Below, one piece after another: positions 43,091-49,514 of a stretch of 49,514 nt of DNA. Position 1 is the stretch's first letter, and the number at the start of each line of letters is the position of its first letter. The stretch comes from Vitrella brassicaformis CCMP3155 (taxonomy: Eukaryota > Protista > Chromerida), in NCBI GenBank assembly GCA_001179505.1, contig CDMY01000570.1, forward strand, positions 1 through 49,514. The letters run 5' to 3'. A program made the translations under genes and the position numbers. The notes below the pieces were generated by a model. It was not told where the DNA came from, searched no databases, and saw nothing but the letters and a program-made list of their open reading frames with translations.

Positions 43091-44171
43091 CGCGAGGCCT
43101 CCGTCCCGGACTGCCGTCGACAGCAAGGGAAAGCACCTGCACCAAACAGCACCAACGACAGACAGACAGCACCAGCCATCCAATCGATGGCATGGAGGTG
43201 AGATGAGCAGCCAGCCAGCCAGTGGCAGTGCCTGTCACTTACCCTCCCCAGTAGCATGCCGCCAGTATGTTGAGACCTCACGGGAGACTCACGGGAGCAC
43301 ATCATCACGGCTGTCGGCGCATCATCTGCAGATCTGCAGAACATCAATGCCCACCTCGTCGATGGCAGATGACCACCACCATCGTCACAACCACCCTCCG
43401 CAGCACCGTGCAGCGGTGTTTTCAGGGTTTCGGGTTAGAGATCACAGCAGCTGAGCTTGCAGCGCCTTTCCGAAGCGCGGCCTTTCGGCGATGGCGAGAA
43501 GGGCGTCGACCACATCAACACCGATCCTCGGCGCATCTTACAAGTGGCCTGCCGCTGTGGTTGCAGACTGCTCGCCGCTGTCCTCCACCACTCCGCCGCC
43601 TCTATCTGCCACCAGCCGAGCAGCAGTAGACCACACCACATCGCTGCGGCCTGGCGACCACCTGACGAAGACAAAGAGAGGGAGAGGACCGCTGCGGCGG
43701 CGGATGGCGGTGTTTCTCGCTGCCTGGCGGCTGGCTGGCGTGTCCGCGGCTGCCCGCACCCTCCAGACGGCAGATCCAGTGTTTCTCAGCACTTTTAATT
43801 CCTTCGCTGTCTCGGCGAGAAAATCCCACGGCTTAGCTCGCAGATTATTTCAGCACAGAGAGGGCAGACCAGACACAGCAGAGGACTGAGAAAGTGTGTG
43901 GTTGGCCTCTGTGTGTGCAGGAACGGACCTGTCGAAGGAAAACTCGGTTCCTTCAGCGATTTCGGCTGGAGGGCTCTGGCCGTCTGTGGAGCATTGCAGA
44001 GGTCACGAGGACCGCTGAATGGCCTCACTCAGGTACAGAGGAGCCACGAACCATCACAGTGAACATCAATTGAATCGTCTGCGGGCTTGGTTTCAGGCGA
44101 TCTCGTGGCCCCCATTTGGTGCGAGCCGGAGACCCCCACATTGGTTCGGTTCTCGGCATTCTACCGGAAGA

Positions 44172-45121
44172 ATGTCTGCCCGACGCGCACCCATGGCACA
44201 TCCTCCCCCTCCCCCACCGCCCGCACGGCATCATCCACCCCCTCTCCACCCGTCGGCACCGTGGCGCCCCCCTCTTTCGTCTATGCGGCCCTCCATCCCC
44301 CTCAGCAACACTGGGGAGGGCTCAGCGGGCGGCCGGGGCACTCAAGGAGCAGTGGGAGCTATGAACGACCTTAACCGCTCCCATGGCGTGGCTGAGGCGC
44401 TTCGGTCCTTCCCCAGATATCAGCCGGGGCTCACCGCCAGCATGACGGCCAGCCGAGCCGACTATCGAGGGTCATCCCAGGCTCTACCGCCTCGCCATGC
44501 GGTGAGACATACGACGGACGGCACACAGGCGGCAATCAGCTCTCTCATAAGTGTGTCATCCGTCCGTGTTGTGTGTCTTCTCTGCACCACCAGGATGAGT
44601 TCGCTGCAGCTGGGCCGAGATTCGTGACGCGCCAGAGTCGCGAGGCGTCGTCACGTCAGAGCAGCTCCGGTGAGTCCGAGCGGCCATCGAGTTCCCGAGA
44701 GGCGCGGCAGCAGACGTCTGACGGTGTGGGGTCTAAGGTGCGTGAGGGGCATCAGAAGGACAAGTTCATGGAGTCGCGATTCTTCAAGAGTAAGCCGCGG
44801 CACACATGACAGAGGAGGGAGGGGAGGATGTGTGTGCCTTTGGTTGGTTGATTGGTGCAGTTGGGGGACATCCGCCGGCTGAGTATGGGCTGTGCAATCT
44901 GGGAAACACGTGCTATCAGTAAGCAAACCACAGCCCCTGCGTCATCCACAAGGCGAACACCAACACACACAAATGGCTGTGCTGTTCCATCCTCCCTCCT
45001 TGTTTTGTTGTTGTGTGCAGGAATGCGGGTATGCAGCCGTTGCTTCGGACTCCATGGTTCTGGGACTGGTCAGCTGGCCAAACGGCCCCCCACCCACACA
45101 ACGGACCAACCAAACAGCACA

Positions 45122-45152
<31 letters not shown>

Positions 45153-48100
45153 CTGTTCGGTGTGCTGTGCAGGTTCGCGGTGGCGTTTGATCAGACGTTC
45201 ATATGTCCTCGCAGCCCATACAGAGGACACGTAGCTTCGGTGATTCAGTGAGTGAGTACCTCCACCACGCACAGACACACCAAACCACAGACACTTCTGA
45301 TGTGGTGTGTGTGTGTGTGTGTGCCAATCAATGACTGCAGGTGTTTGCCGACCTCATGAGAGAGTTTGCGTCGAACGGCCCGTCGCTGCACCAGCAGGGC
45401 GTCGTCGACCCGACCAACTTCCGCCGCGTCTTTGCAAGGAACAAGAAGGAGTTCAGAGGTACACAACACGCCTCACCCAATGCGCACCGGTGGTTGGCAT
45501 CATCACACCAAACAAGACTTGTGTGTGCTGTGTGGGTGTCATTCTGTGGGCAGGTCGCCGTCAGCATGATTCGGCAGAGTTTCTCGTCAAGCTGCTCGAG
45601 TGTCTTCACGAAGTAAGGCACCACCAGATCGCCCCTAACACACGCATCCACCACTGACCTGTGTGTGGGTGTTGGGTGCATGGCACGTGTGCAGGACACC
45701 AACAGGATCCAGGAGAAGCCGACCTTCCACCACATGGACGACCTACCGGGGGAGACGGCCACACAGGCCAGGTGGGTGCGTGGGTCTGTGCGGGGCTGAG
45801 CCACACACGTGAATTGATGGACACTTATCCTTCTCCTTCCCTCTCTCTCTCTCTCTCTGTGTGTGTGTGTCATCAGCGACCGTTGGTTGGCGGACGAGCA
45901 GCGGCGGAGCAGCTCCATCGTCTCGGACGTGTTTGCTGGACAGCTCATGACAGAGATCACATGCCCAAAATGCGGCCACAGTGAGCACACAGCACACACC
46001 CACCACACCACACCACACCCACCACACCCATCAAAGACGTCCCTCAATGCACTGTTGTGTGTCATGATGTGTCTGTCTGTGTGCAGTTCCGCAACTTCGA
46101 GAGCAATAGAACTCTACCCCTGACCATCCCTGACGAGACAGCAGAGGTCGACCTCGACGAGTGCCTCAAGACGTTCTGCAAGATCGAGGTGAGTCCGGTC
46201 CGCCCCATGCAACACACCGACTGCCACACACGCCCCCTCTCTCACTCTCTCTGTGTGTGGCATGCCATTGATCCATTGATCAGGTCTTGAAGGGCGAAGA
46301 CGTGTGGTTCTGTCCCAAGTGCTAGGAATACGTCGAGGCCAGGTGGGCGGGGTGGGGGATGTCTCTGTGCTTGTGTCATGTTGATCTGTCTGTCCGTCTG
46401 TGTGGGTGTGCCAGCAAGGAGGTGACCATCATCAGGCCCCCGCCGGTGCTGGTCGTTGTGCTCGGCCGGTTCCGCAAGGACAAGTTCGGCGGGACGGAGG
46501 GCATCTTCAACGCCAAACGCATCAACACCCCCGTCAGCTTCAAGACCAGCAACCTGTGTCTCGCTGACGTCGATGGCCTCTGCCAGCACTCTGGTGAGAG
46601 GGAGATGTGGGAGAGAGGCGGGGAGGGTGCGCTCATGCCTCTATGTGTCTCTCTCTCTCTGTGTGAGTGTTTGTTGCGTGTTCAGAGGATCCCTCCATCG
46701 GCCGCCAGTACGACCTGTACGGCGTCACCCACCACGACGGCATCCTGCAGGGCGGCCACTACTACTCGTGAGCACACGACAGACACACAGACAGACACAC
46801 AAACAAACAGACAGACAGACAGACAGGGCGTGACTGGAGAATGGATATGTGGGTCTGTGTGTTGTGTGTGCAGCTATGTCAAGCTGGTGGTCAATGGGGT
46901 GGTGACGTGGGTGCGGTTCGACGACAAGGCGACTGAGTACTTCATGCCTGAGGAGCAGATCCAGGGTACGTATCTGGAGCGGGGAGCAGGGGAGGGGACG
47001 TCGCACAACAAGAGAGACTGGCCCATGTGTGTGTGTGTGTGTGTGTCAGGTCCGGGGGCCTACATCCTTTGGTATGCGGCCCGGGACATGTCCAAGACGT
47101 TCCAGGAGAAGCGCTCCGTCCCCATCGCCAAGCGTACGTACGACGATAGACGAGCACACACCCGTAGCACACAGCACACACACACTATTCGGCTCTGTTG
47201 TGCAGTGCCCGACCCATCGGCCGAGGACGAGGAGGCGGACGACGTCGACAGCGATGAGGAGGACTCACCTGCGGCCGTCGACTTGGAGAACTTCCCACCA
47301 CTGGCACCGACCAGCCGGCCTCCCAAGCGCAGCACTGGTCCCCAGCTCCCGCCCCGCCCGTCCCCACCACACACACACCGTCCGCCGCCAGCGCCGCCAG
47401 CGAAGCCACAGACCCCCCCGACCACCAACCGGAGGAAGCCCGCCCCTCCCGCATCCGCCAAGCGTCCCGACGTGCCACCGACTCAGAAGAAGGAGCGTGA
47501 AGGTACGCGCCGATGATGTCGACCATCCACCCACACAGAGACACGCTCACACGCATTCATTCATGTGTGTCTGCTTGGTGTGTGCTGTGTGCTGTGTGCA
47601 GTGCCGCTGCCCCGTTCCATCGACAACCCGGTGGCGCCGTCGAGCCCCTCGAGTGTGGTCGACAAGGACACCGAGGACATCACCTCCCCGCTGGACGACA
47701 GCACCGACATCGCCGCACCGGCGGCTGCTGGCGCTTCCTCCCACCTCCCTGCGCCCACCGTCCGGCCCTCGAAGCCGTCCACTGTGCCCCCGCCCGCCCC
47801 CGCTGCTCCCACCCCTCCGGCCGCTGCCCTCTCGCCACCGCCAGTGCACGGCAAGGCCCCCAGTGCCATCACCACCACCACCGAGAAAGAGGAGACGGCA
47901 GAGAGGGCGCCAGGGAAGAAGAAGGGCAAGAACAGAGGGAAGGACACGGACACGGCCGCCCAGCTCCGACGGATTCGGGCGGTCAGCACACTCGCACCAC
48001 ACGAAGCACAAGCGGTCAGAACGCTGCGTGGATAATGAGTGTGTGTTGGTCCGACAGGCCCTAGCGATGATGGAGAAGGGCGCTGAGGACAAGAACAAGA

Positions 48101-49514
48101 CTCGCGCCCCGGCCAAGAAGGTCAGCAGACAGCCCCGCAGCCCCTCCAACGCCCCCTCCCATTTGTGTGTGTGTGGTGGCTACCAGGCCGCGGGGGGCCA
48201 CCGCATGCTCACCAAGAAGGAGCAGGAGGAGCGGAGCCGCATTCAGGAGAAACAGCGGTACCTGTTCACACACAATGTGGGGGCCAAATGCGCACACACA
48301 TATACACCATGTCTGTCTGTCTGTCTGTGTGCGTGGTCTATACGAACGTGTCTGCAGTGAGGAGCAGGAGAGGAAGAAGAGGGAGGAGGAGCAGGACCAG
48401 AAGCGCCGAGAGGAGGAGGAGGAACAGAAGCGCCGTGAGGAGGAGGAGAGGAAGGAGGAGGAGCGGAAGCGACTCGAGGAGCAGGTACGCACCCTCCCCC
48501 ACCCACCCAACCAACTCGACATACCTACGACATGTGTTGTGTGTGCGCGTGTGTGGTGTGGACCAGGAGACGACACGTGCTTCAGTCGAGCGGATGTCCA
48601 AGCTGGCGGGCCTCGTCAGCCGGTGCCTCGCCGACGAGCTCACTGCCGCCAAGCTCGTCAGCGAGACGCACCAGCTCCTACAAGAGGTAGACCAACACAC
48701 ACACACGCACTACTCGTTCAGTTCACCTGAGCAACCAACTCGTCTGTCTGTCTGTCTGTGTGTGTTCCGTGTGTCAGTCTGATTGGCACCAGGTGTTGCC
48801 GTCGGCCACCATCGCCGAGGAGCTGCTCAAAGCCATCGATGGTGCGCATCTCTGACTGACACCGACATACGGCGATTGGTTGATGTGATGTGTGGTGGGG
48901 TGCACTGCAGCTGGTGTGGCTGATGAGAGTTTGGAGAGCCTCGAGGCGGTCAGTGCCCTCGTCGCCAAAATCAAGCCCACACTCGAGAACATCTTCCAGG
49001 TCAATCAGTCAGTCAGTCAGGGAGGGAGGGAGGGACAGACACAGATGGCATGGATGTGCACGCGCAACCTTGTGTTCATTCAGACGTCTTGCATCCACCG
49101 GCACAAGCTACGGTTCCTGTTTGCCATTCAGAAGGGCACACTCGGTAACAAACTGACGTGACCAGGAGCCATGCAGTGCACGTCCGTCCATCTCTCCGCT
49201 ATGTGTGTGTGTCTCTGTCCATTGTGTGTGTCCATTGTGTGTGACATAATAGAGTTGCGTCACGTCCGCATATCGCCCTTGTGGGCTTTGGTCGAGGCCG
49301 TCTTCGACGCCCTCTACACGCAGGACATCATCGAGGAACAGTACTTCACCTGGGTAGGTAGCCCAACACACATGACTGACTGACACACACGGAGAGGATG
49401 CACTGGCTGACTGCTTTCACGGGCCCCTCTGTGTGTCCAGTGGCGGGAGGACGAGCAGGACAAGACACCAGGCAAACAAGAGACACTCTCCCAGGTTCAC
49501 ACACACGCACAAAC
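44172..49514 (+). CDS. Ubiquitin-specific protease (peptidase C19) with Pro-rich/charged linker and C-terminal W2 domain; in-frame TAG at 46323; 3' end beyond window
   Basis: Cys box GLCNLGNTCYQ|NAGMQPL (Cys 44911), RQHDSAEFL, SIVSDVFAGQL...TCPKCGH, LDECLKTFCKIE, WFCPKC, His box YDLYGVTHHDGILQGGHYYS (His 46757), WVRFDD, AYILWY. Terminal exons LFAIQ, FDALYTQDIIEEQYFTW|WREDEQDKTPGKQETLSQ. Start is 44172 or 44019. Confidence 0.88.

What the first reader, a model, noticed from the sequence alone, without database searches (positions are those of the whole stretch)
44172..49514. Deubiquitinase fused to an eIF4G/eIF5/eIF2B-epsilon-type W2 domain
A USP catalytic domain with intact Cys, His and Asp is followed, through in-phase exons, by a Pro-rich linker, an E/K/R coiled coil and a helical region. 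That region ends RFLFAIQ...VEAVFDALYTQDIIEEQYFTW|WREDEQDKTPGKQETLSQ, which matches the acidic/aromatic boxes of W2 domains (LY..DII.EE....W). W2 domains bind eIF2-beta and, in eIF4G, Mnk kinases. I know of no characterised USP-W2 protein. It suggests a DUB recruited to translation-initiation complexes (ribosome ubiquitin control or stress-granule function).
Basis: partly seen in the sequence, partly recalled or inferred. Interest (0 to 1): 0.75.

Follow-up and report, generated by a model that had tools for sequence, protein, structure and literature searches.

The report
Broken deubiquitinase gene with W2 tail
In the alga Vitrella brassicaformis, a ubiquitin-removing enzyme gene really is joined exon by exon to a translation-factor-type W2 domain, but this copy carries three disabling mutations inside the enzyme domain, so it is most likely a recently dead, still transcribed duplicate.

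Summary
The window is the whole contig CDMY01000570.1 of Vitrella brassicaformis CCMP3155. A 26-exon + strand gene (44361/44172 to the contig end) encodes four parts in order:
- a USP4/11/15-like deubiquitinase domain;
- a Pro-rich linker;
- an E/R/K-rich helix;
- the first two thirds of an eIF4G/DAP5-type W2 domain.

The domain calls hold. The public model scores UCH E 1.8e-40. The window's truncated W2 scores 17.9 bits, and complete sister copies score 44 bits, above Pfam's cut-off.

The "intact" enzyme domain does not hold. Compared with an intact paralogue, this copy has three lesions between the Cys and His boxes:
- a weakened exon 5 donor, with probable use of a cryptic donor that adds an in-frame TGA (inferred from a contig length);
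- a 2-nt deletion at the start of exon 10;
- AAG>TAG at 46323.

DNA contigs from two studies agree with the last two lesions. Spliced RNA contigs use the canonical sites. The public model hides the last two lesions by skipping 26 codons.

The linker-helix-W2 cassette is a Vitrella-only segmental duplicate. An OTU-RING deubiquitinase gene carries it too, and its W2 exons recur in a W2-STAND array. The scan had already noted this deubiquitinase-W2 pairing on other DNA (s1-226941, s1-197152). No paper describes the architecture. Interest is modest.

The parts
44361..44501 (+). Exon 1. The conserved start codon is at 44361 (MNDLNRSHG...).
   Evidence: RNA contig X5 record 17 covers 44198-44500.
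44000..44389 (+). 5' segment (upstream region plus the first 10 codons) shared at 98.5% with the OTU-RING gene on CDMY01000468.1.
   Evidence: blastn.
44861..47133 (+). USP (peptidase C19) catalytic domain, exons 3-15. Cys codon at 44911-44913, His codon at 46757-46759, FDD at 46917-46925. It is 80% identical in DNA to the intact paralogue on CDMY01000404.1.
   Evidence: Pfam UCH E 1.8e-40 on P0001. Single-exon UCH hits are collinear with the profile. blastn. The paralogue's domain is closest to USP15, USP4 and USP11 structures, E 3e-56.
45240..45257 (+). Lesion 1 (inferred). The exon 5 donor reads GTGATT where the paralogue has GTGAGT. A cryptic GTGAGT donor at 45252 would add 12 nt that end in an in-frame TGA (45249-45251).
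   Evidence: for the donor comparison. RNA contig X5 record 17 holds 185 nt between exons 2 and 6, which fits 58+48+79 and not 58+48+67. The inference rests on length only.
46087..46090 (+). Lesion 2. A 2-nt deletion at the start of exon 10 relative to the paralogue. Exon 9 is 104 nt in both genes, so canonical splicing (45980 to 46087) shifts the frame and stops translation after 359 residues.
   Evidence: The piece of RNA contig X5 record 18 ends at 45980. DNA contig X2 record 3 covers 45876-46182 with no differences.
46323..46325 (+). Lesion 3. An in-frame TAG replaces the AAG (Lys) of the paralogue, in the second Cys pair of the zinc ribbon (CPKC-K).
   Evidence: DNA contigs X2 record 4 and X4 record 13 cover it with no differences. 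RNA contig X5 record 19 reads GCCAG before exon 12, which fits the full exon 11 and not the shortened one.
47206..47981 (+). Pro/Ser/Ala-rich linker, exons 16-17. The cassette shared with the OTU-RING gene begins at 47286. Part of exon 17 is also present in the USP paralogue.
   Evidence: dN/dS 0.85. RNA contigs X5 records 19-21.
48058..48484 (+). E/R/K-rich helix, exons 18-20. It has almost no hydrophobic positions, so a single ER/K alpha-helix spacer is more likely than a coiled coil.
   Evidence: Translation. dN/dS 0.31 against copy 1. The helix type is an inference from composition.
48567..49494 (+). eIF4G/DAP5-type W2 domain, exons 21-26, cut off by the contig end. The first aromatic/acidic box is in exon 25 (49253-49353). 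The second box lies beyond the contig end.
   Evidence: Pfam W2. PDB sequence matches to eIF4G2 (3d3m, E 6.3e-6) and eIF4G1 (6zmw, E 1.7e-5) over query residues 34-185. Atlas neighbours are W2 clusters. Exons differ from copy 1 at 8 of 369 nt and introns at 66 of 389 nt.
48790..49514 (+). Last 725 nt of the contig, identical to W2 copy 2 (head of the W2-halfCHAT-STAND array) on CDMY01000468.1. The contig breaks inside this repeat.
   Evidence: DNA contig X4 record 15 spans 48625-49100 and supports the join of exon 21 to the W2 exons at this locus.

Best explanation
This is a transcribed, recently disabled duplicate of a USP4/11/15-like deubiquitinase gene. The gene is joined to a Vitrella-specific cassette made of a Pro-rich linker, an ER/K helix and an eIF4G-type W2 domain.

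Shown here:
- The exons are collinear and in phase in the DNA.
- The domains are a real USP and a real W2.
- The cassette is a segmental duplicate shared with an OTU-RING deubiquitinase gene. Its W2 exons are also shared with a W2-halfCHAT-STAND array.
- Relative to the intact USP paralogue, this copy has a 2-nt deletion at the start of exon 10 and a Lys-to-TAG change in exon 11.
- The USP exons are transcribed and spliced at the canonical sites.

Inferred:
- A weakened exon 5 donor leads to a cryptic donor and an in-frame TGA.
- The mature mRNA therefore carries premature stops before the His box, so no USP-W2 fusion protein is made. At most a fragment of about 230-360 residues with only the Cys box would result.
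- The fusion was probably functional until recently.
- In intact family members the W2 tail would act as a protein-binding adaptor that places a deubiquitinase next to a W2 partner. For eIF4G, DAP5 and eIF5 W2 domains the known partners are the eIF2-beta K-boxes or Mnk-type kinases.
For: - Identity of the locus: contig CDMY01000570.1 of GCA_001179505.1, 49514 nt, the same length as the window.
- Gene model. The public model P0001 differs from the canonical exons only by shortening exons 9 and 11, using donors at 45929 and 46319. This skips 18 and 8 codons and hides the two lesions.
- Lesions against L003. Exon 9 is 104 nt in both genes, exon 10 is 102 against 107 nt, and AAG is TAG here.
- Consequence: a stop after 359 residues with canonical splicing.
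- DNA support: contigs of runs from two studies match the window with no differences across both lesions (X2 records 3 and 4, X4 record 13).
- RNA support: spliced contigs X5 records 17, 18 and 19 have no mismatches. Record 18 ends at 45980. Record 19 joins the full exon 11 to exon 12. Record 17 carries 12 extra nt that fit only the donor at 45252.
- Constraint: dN/dS for the USP domain against the paralogue is 0.32 at dS 0.37, so purifying selection acted for most of the divergence. W2 exons are far better conserved than their introns (2% against 17% differences; dN/dS 0.29).
- Spread of the cassette: it was found only in the Vitrella proteins P0001, P0003 and P0005.
Against: - Downstream of the lesions about 700 codons stay open, which is unusual for long decay. 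It is expected if the inactivation is recent or if the tail is homogenised by gene conversion; the last 725 nt are identical to another copy.
- All three lesions lie in the first third of the coding sequence.
- RNA letters at the TAG and at the exon 9/10 joint were not seen directly, only piece boundaries and contig lengths.
- Contigs drop rare isoforms, so a minor frame-preserving isoform like the public model cannot be excluded.
- The runs that confirm the lesions may come from the same strain as the assembly.
- Only one paralogue serves as comparator for the USP part.
Confidence: 0.68

Rival explanations
1. A functional USP-W2 protein is made through alternative 5' splice sites, as in the public model P0001. 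That model uses donors at 45929 and 46319, which skip 18 and 8 codons and so avoid the frameshift and the TAG.
For: Both alternative donors are GT and keep the frame. P0001 still scores UCH E 1.8e-40 over the whole profile. The frame stays open downstream.
Against: The RNA contigs extend to 45980 and include the full exon 11. The skipped 26 residues carry both Cys pairs of the zinc ribbon in the ubiquitin-binding fingers, which the paralogue keeps. Gene predictors routinely choose such paths to avoid stops. The probable cryptic donor after exon 5 adds a further stop.
Confidence: 0.1
2. The lesions are sequencing or assembly errors, or strain-specific polymorphisms, and the true gene encodes an intact USP-W2 protein that targets a deubiquitinase to translation-initiation factors.
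For: The catalytic motifs are all present and dN/dS is 0.32. The W2 exons are under constraint. The assembly is fragmented and breaks inside this gene.
Against: Contigs built independently from runs of two studies reproduce the deletion and the TAG with no differences. Three separate lesions of different kinds are unlikely to be errors. No difference at these places appears in any of the four runs laid.
Confidence: 0.08
3. The USP head is dead, but the tail (ER/K helix plus W2) is still used. It could be expressed from an internal start (Met codons in exon 18) as a small 5MP/BZW-like W2 protein, or it could serve as a donor for gene conversion with the other W2 copies.
For: All lesions lie upstream of exon 12. 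The W2 exons are conserved and identical to copy 2 over 725 nt. Exon 18 begins with ALAMMEK.
Against: No transcript start was seen inside the gene. RNA contigs over the W2 exons carry the variants of copy 1, so they come from the OTU-RING gene and not from this locus. From 48790 on the window cannot be told apart from copy 2.
Confidence: 0.09
4. Programmed recoding: TAG readthrough plus a frameshift, or a non-canonical GA-AG intron at 45983, produces the full-length protein.
For: A GA donor 2 nt downstream would restore the frame and give the same length as the paralogue. Other scan notes list in-frame TAGs in otherwise intact genes of this genome.
Against: The RNA piece ends at 45980 and not at 45982. 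Two or three independent recoding events in one gene, each at a site where the paralogue has ordinary sequence, would be without precedent.
Confidence: 0.03

Closest known systems
USP15 / USP4 / USP11 subfamily of ubiquitin-specific proteases (for example PDB 6gh9, 7r2g, 2y6e)
   Same: These are the best solved-structure matches of the paralogue's catalytic domain (E 3e-56 to 1e-51 over the whole domain). The Cys, QHD and His boxes and the zinc-ribbon CxxC pairs are shared.
   Different: No DUSP or UBL domains were found by Pfam. The C-terminal linker, ER/K helix and W2 are not part of that subfamily. The window copy has a broken frame.
W2 domain of eIF4G1 and eIF4G2/DAP5 (PDB 6zmw, 8oz0, 3d3m, 3l6a; Pfam PF02020)
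   Same: The sequence matches over the whole helical domain, including both aromatic/acidic boxes in the complete sister copy. Pfam W2 is above its cut-off in complete copies. The nearest Atlas clusters are eIF4G3-like W2 proteins.
   Different: No MIF4G or MA3 domain precedes it. It is attached to deubiquitinase or STAND modules. Binding partners are unknown. In the window the domain is cut at profile position 41 of 79 (about 58 with exon 26, my estimate).
Vitrella OTU-RING-linker-helix-W2 gene on CDMY01000468.1 (P0003; scan notes s1-197152 and s1-226941)
   Same: It has the same 5' 390 bp (98.5%) and the same cassette (85.6-92.6% in DNA; W2 exons 98% identical). RNA contigs with its variants show its W2 exons spliced.
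   Different: Its ubiquitin-editing head is an otubain-like peptidase plus a RING-like zinc module, not a USP. Its public model runs on into halfCHAT and STAND pieces.
Duplicated (unprocessed) transcribed pseudogenes
   Same: The copy keeps its introns, is transcribed, has a few fresh lesions and shows intermediate dN/dS against the parent-like paralogue.
   Different: The parent-like paralogue (P0002) lacks the W2 tail, so this copy is the only USP-W2 arrangement found.

Membership tests
USP / peptidase C19 (Pfam PF00443 UCH) | Profile match over the whole catalytic domain | tested here: met
   P0001 scores E 1.8e-40 over profile positions 2-254 of 254. Single exons hit collinear profile segments.
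USP / peptidase C19 (Pfam PF00443 UCH) | Catalytic Cys box, His box and Asp/Asn motif present | tested here: met
   NLGNTCY, GGHYY and FDD are all in the translation. Their codon coordinates are given under parts.
USP / peptidase C19 (Pfam PF00443 UCH) | Uninterrupted reading frame from the Cys box to the His box (needed for an active enzyme) | tested here: not met
   A 2-nt deletion at exon 10 and a TAG at 46323. A probable TGA from a cryptic donor.
W2 domain (Pfam PF02020) | Profile match above the curated cut-off (30 bits) | tested here: inconclusive
   The window's own part scores 17.9 bits over profile positions 2-41 of 79 because the contig ends. Complete sister copies, 92.6-98.7% identical in DNA, score 43.6 and 44.4 bits.
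W2 domain (Pfam PF02020) | Two aromatic/acidic boxes | tested here: inconclusive
   The first box (LY.QDIIEE..F.WW) is in exon 25. The second box (NWLDWL plus an acidic tail) is seen only in the sister copies and lies beyond the contig end here.
W2 domain (Pfam PF02020) | All-helical HEAT-like fold | tested here: inconclusive
   The single-sequence AlphaFold2 model is all-helical (9 helices) but has mean pLDDT 49.8. That is too poor for a fold search, so none was run.
eIF4G / DAP5 proteins | MIF4G and MA3 domains before the W2 | tested here: not met
   Pfam finds neither in P0001 or P0003.
5MP / BZW proteins | 5MP HEAT domain (PF25504) before the W2 | tested here: not met
   No such Pfam hit. 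A 5MP cluster ranks only 20th in the Atlas, with score 0.78.

The most novel reading that the evidence does not exclude
Vitrella has evolved a portable targeting cassette (ER/K helix plus eIF4G-type W2) and has placed it on two unrelated deubiquitinase classes (USP and OTU-RING). Its W2 exons also head STAND NTPase genes. Under this reading, W2 serves as a shared adaptor that links ubiquitin editing and NLR-like signalling to one partner, possibly eIF2-beta or another translation-initiation factor. The copy in this window would then be a recently lost member of a working system.
Probability: 0.12. Interest if true: 0.65.

Novelty: new variant of a known kind. Interest (0 to 1): 0.3.

Why it matters
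A deubiquitinase tethered to the translation-initiation machinery by a W2 domain would be a new way to couple ubiquitin removal to protein synthesis. No such protein has been described. This locus shows that the combination exists in one chromerid alga and was kept under selection for some time. It is also the weakest place to study it: the copy is broken, it is cut off by the contig end, and it belongs to a set of recent duplicates. The practical lessons are two. The public gene model is an artefact that hides two lesions. Any experiment should start from the intact OTU-RING-W2 paralogue.

Tried and rejected
- A first hand-built model with a GA donor at 45983 read straight through. I rejected it after the paralogue alignment and the RNA piece boundary at 45980.
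- I enumerated GT-AG exon chains that give 185 nt between exons 2 and 6 without stops. Only two solutions came out, both implausible. One search was the same search unfiltered and was useless. The solution that fits includes a stop.
- The whole-protein word search with P0001 was swamped by low-complexity words, with 8000 candidates and 3 hits.
- Region searches with the W2 part of P0001 and of P0003 found only Vitrella proteins. They are sensitive only to close relatives within the length limits, so they do not exclude distant USP-W2 proteins elsewhere.
- The AlphaFold2 single-sequence model of the W2 module had pLDDT 49.8. It was not used, and no fold search was run.
- Intron hairpins: 8 introns were folded, giving z-scores from -2.9 to +1.6 against dinucleotide shuffles. 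Folding is no better than composition gives.
- Paper searches for W2 together with deubiquitinase or USP returned only incidental co-mentions. A search on Vitrella pseudogenes returned nothing relevant.
- The spliced protein has no reference, so it was never sent whole to any search tool. Single exons, stop-free stretches and the public model P0001 were used instead.
Full report
**What the window is.** The look-up of encoding contigs places the public protein P0001 on contig CDMY01000570.1 of assembly GCA_001179505.1 (Vitrella brassicaformis CCMP3155). That contig is 49514 nt long, the same as the window. The finding therefore sits at the end of a contig, and the gene runs off it.

**Gene model.**
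- I read 44000-49514 and chained exons by hand. The result is a + strand gene of 26 exons with introns of 66-116 nt.
- The public model P0001 (922 aa) came back from the representatives search with the stop-free stretch 46359-47513.
- Mapped exactly onto the DNA, P0001 uses the same exons as my model, with four differences:
  - It starts at the ATG at 44361.
  - Exon 4 is 45021-45068. I adopted this.
  - Exon 9 is cut short at 45928.
  - Exon 11 is cut short at 46318.
In the paralogue the same frame is closed by stops, so 44361 is the conserved start.

**Domains.**
- USP: Pfam gives UCH at E 1.8e-40 across the whole profile for P0001. Single exons give collinear UCH hits. The Cys box, QHD box, His box and FDD are all present in the translation. 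The paralogue's domain is closest to the solved USP15, USP4 and USP11 domains (E 3e-56 to 1e-51).
- W2 in the window: exon 25 alone gives W2 as its only Pfam family (E 0.0046). The tail of P0001 gives 17.9 bits over profile positions 2-41 of 79. This is below the cut-off of 30 because the contig ends in intron 26.
- W2 in the sister copies: the two complete copies in P0003 score 43.6 and 44.4 bits, and 75.4 bits together. Against solved structures, the complete copy matches eIF4G2/DAP5 (3d3m, E 6.3e-6) and the whole C-terminal W2 region of eIF4G1 (6zmw and 8oz0, E about 2e-5, query residues 34-185). The nearest Atlas clusters are W2 families.
- The "helical region" of the finding is therefore the first part of the W2 HEAT domain.
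- The E/K/R stretch has almost no hydrophobic residues. I read it as an ER/K single helix rather than a coiled coil. This is an inference from composition.

**The frame is broken.** The intact paralogue P0002 lies on CDMY01000404.1 (locus L003). It is 80% identical in DNA over the USP exons and has the same exon structure. Aligned to it, the window copy shows three lesions.
1. *Exon 5 donor.* It reads GTGATT where the paralogue has GTGAGT, and a GTGAGT lies 12 nt downstream.
   - RNA contig X5 record 17 holds 185 nt between exons 2 and 6.
   - Among single changes of a canonical splice site, only use of the donor at 45252 gives this length (58+48+79 nt).
   - That adds 12 nt ending in an in-frame TGA.
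   - This lesion is inferred from length alone.
2. *Exon 10 deletion.*
   - Exon 9 is 104 nt in both genes. Exon 10 is 102 nt here against 107 nt in the paralogue.
   - Part of the difference is a 2-nt deletion right after the acceptor.
   - With the canonical joint the frame shifts and stops after 359 residues.
   - The piece of RNA contig X5 record 18 ends at 45980, the canonical donor. It does not end at 45982, as a GA donor would require.
3. *Nonsense codon.* The Lys codon AAG of the paralogue's CPKC-K motif is TAG at 46323.

Support from reads:
- DNA-like contigs of two studies match the window with no differences over lesions 2 and 3: X2 records 3 and 4, and X4 record 13.
- RNA contig X5 record 19 reads GCCAG before exon 12. 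This fits the full exon 11 and not the shortened one of the public model.
- The public model avoids lesions 2 and 3 by dropping 18 and 8 codons, which include both Cys pairs of the zinc ribbon. I take that as a predictor's workaround.

**Age of the damage.**
- dN/dS of the USP domain against the paralogue is 0.32 at dS 0.37. Selection therefore acted for most of the time since the duplication, and the inactivation looks recent.
- No further stop or frameshift occurs in exons 12-26.

**The cassette.** blastn against the loci of P0003 (L002, CDMY01000468.1) and P0002 gives these matches:

| Window segment | Match | Identity |
|---|---|---|
| 44000-44389 (5' region and first 10 codons) | start of the OTU-RING gene | 98.5% |
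| 47286-48732 (first part of the cassette: linker, helix, W2 exon 21) | its copy 1 | 85.6% |
| 48690-49511 (W2 exons 22-26) | its copy 1 | 92.6% |
| 48757-49514 | W2 copy 2, head of the W2-halfCHAT-STAND array | 98.7% |

- From 48790 to the contig end the window is identical to copy 2.
- Against copy 1, the W2 exons differ at 8 of 369 nt and their introns at 66 of 389 nt. dN/dS is 0.29 for W2, 0.31 for the helix and 0.85 for the linker. The W2 coding sequence has therefore been under constraint.
- DNA contig X4 record 15 spans 48625-49100, so the join of exon 21 to the W2 exons at this locus is not an assembly chimera.
- The USP paralogue P0002 shares part of exon 17 but has no W2.

**Transcription of the tail.**
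- The GT..AG joints 48840-to-48910 and 49352-to-49440 appear in RNA-like contigs.
- The X5 contig with the 48840-to-48910 joint carries 48941C and 49101C, the variants of copy 1.
- The X6 contigs across the 49352-to-49440 joint have 1-3 mismatches to the window, and copy 1 differs from the window at two places in exon 26.
- The first comes from the OTU-RING gene, and the second very probably does too. The two X5 contigs at the 49352-to-49440 joint could not be assigned to a copy.
- From 48790 on, reads cannot separate this locus from copy 2.
- No contig shown bridges the USP exons and the W2 exons. A single transcript is plausible but unproven.

**Distribution and literature.**
- Searches of the large protein collections found the cassette only in the Vitrella proteins P0001, P0003 and P0005. 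The nearest non-Vitrella USP is 29% identical and has a DUSP domain, not a W2.
- These searches see only close relatives within length limits.
- Paper searches gave no description of a deubiquitinase with a W2 domain.
- The scan itself had already noted the deubiquitinase-W2 pairing and the W2-STAND arrays on contig CDMY01000468.1 (s1-226941 and s1-197152). My comparison agrees that two deubiquitinase genes carry the cassette, and adds that the USP one is broken.

**Verdict.**
The domain architecture is real in the DNA and is not described elsewhere.
- The claim of an intact enzyme fails. A deubiquitinase working on translation complexes cannot be argued from this copy.
- Most likely this is a transcribed, recently disabled duplicate (0.68).
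- The interesting question is why Vitrella puts an eIF4G-type W2 on two kinds of deubiquitinase and on STAND proteins. That question belongs to the intact paralogue.

Noticed in passing
window 44000-44389 and L002 1683-2072: The upstream region and first 10 codons of this USP gene are 98.5% identical to the start of the OTU-RING gene on another contig. The two deubiquitinase genes therefore share both ends (5' segment and 3' cassette) and differ in the enzyme head. This looks like a head swap by non-allelic recombination or gene conversion.
   Followed up: partly
window 48790-49514 and L002 7448-8172: The last 725 nt of the contig are identical to W2 copy 2 of the STAND array, and the contig ends inside this repeat. 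What follows exon 26 at this locus is unknown: either a stop after W2 or halfCHAT-STAND exons.
   Followed up: partly
window 45877-45982 and 46284-46342: The public gene model (P0001, annotated as a partial unnamed protein) shortens exons 9 and 11 to avoid a frameshift and a stop. It is an example of annotation hiding a pseudogene.
   Followed up: yes
window introns, e.g. 45981-46086 and 46768-46873: Introns are CA-rich after the donor and TG-rich before the acceptor, as many other scan notes on this genome say. Eight introns folded here gave z-scores of -2.9 to +1.6 against dinucleotide shuffles, so their folding is no better than their composition gives.
   Followed up: partly
window 45962-46140, 46499-46677 and 48289-48467: Depth spikes and many false long joints (for example 46019-to-48310 and 46670-to-48310) in all runs sit on (CA)n/(TG)n/(TC)n intron microsatellites. 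They are contig artefacts, not splicing.
   Followed up: no
window 45722-45733: One X4 contig (record 12, 45588-45773) differs from the window at 9 letters, 5 of them within 12 nt of exon 8. It could be a local rearrangement, another close copy or a contig artefact.
   Followed up: no
L003 8985-10618: The intact USP paralogue shares the first 100 or so codons of the exon 17 linker. It then runs on as one 1.6-kb low-complexity exon without any W2. It either lost the cassette or never had it.
   Followed up: no
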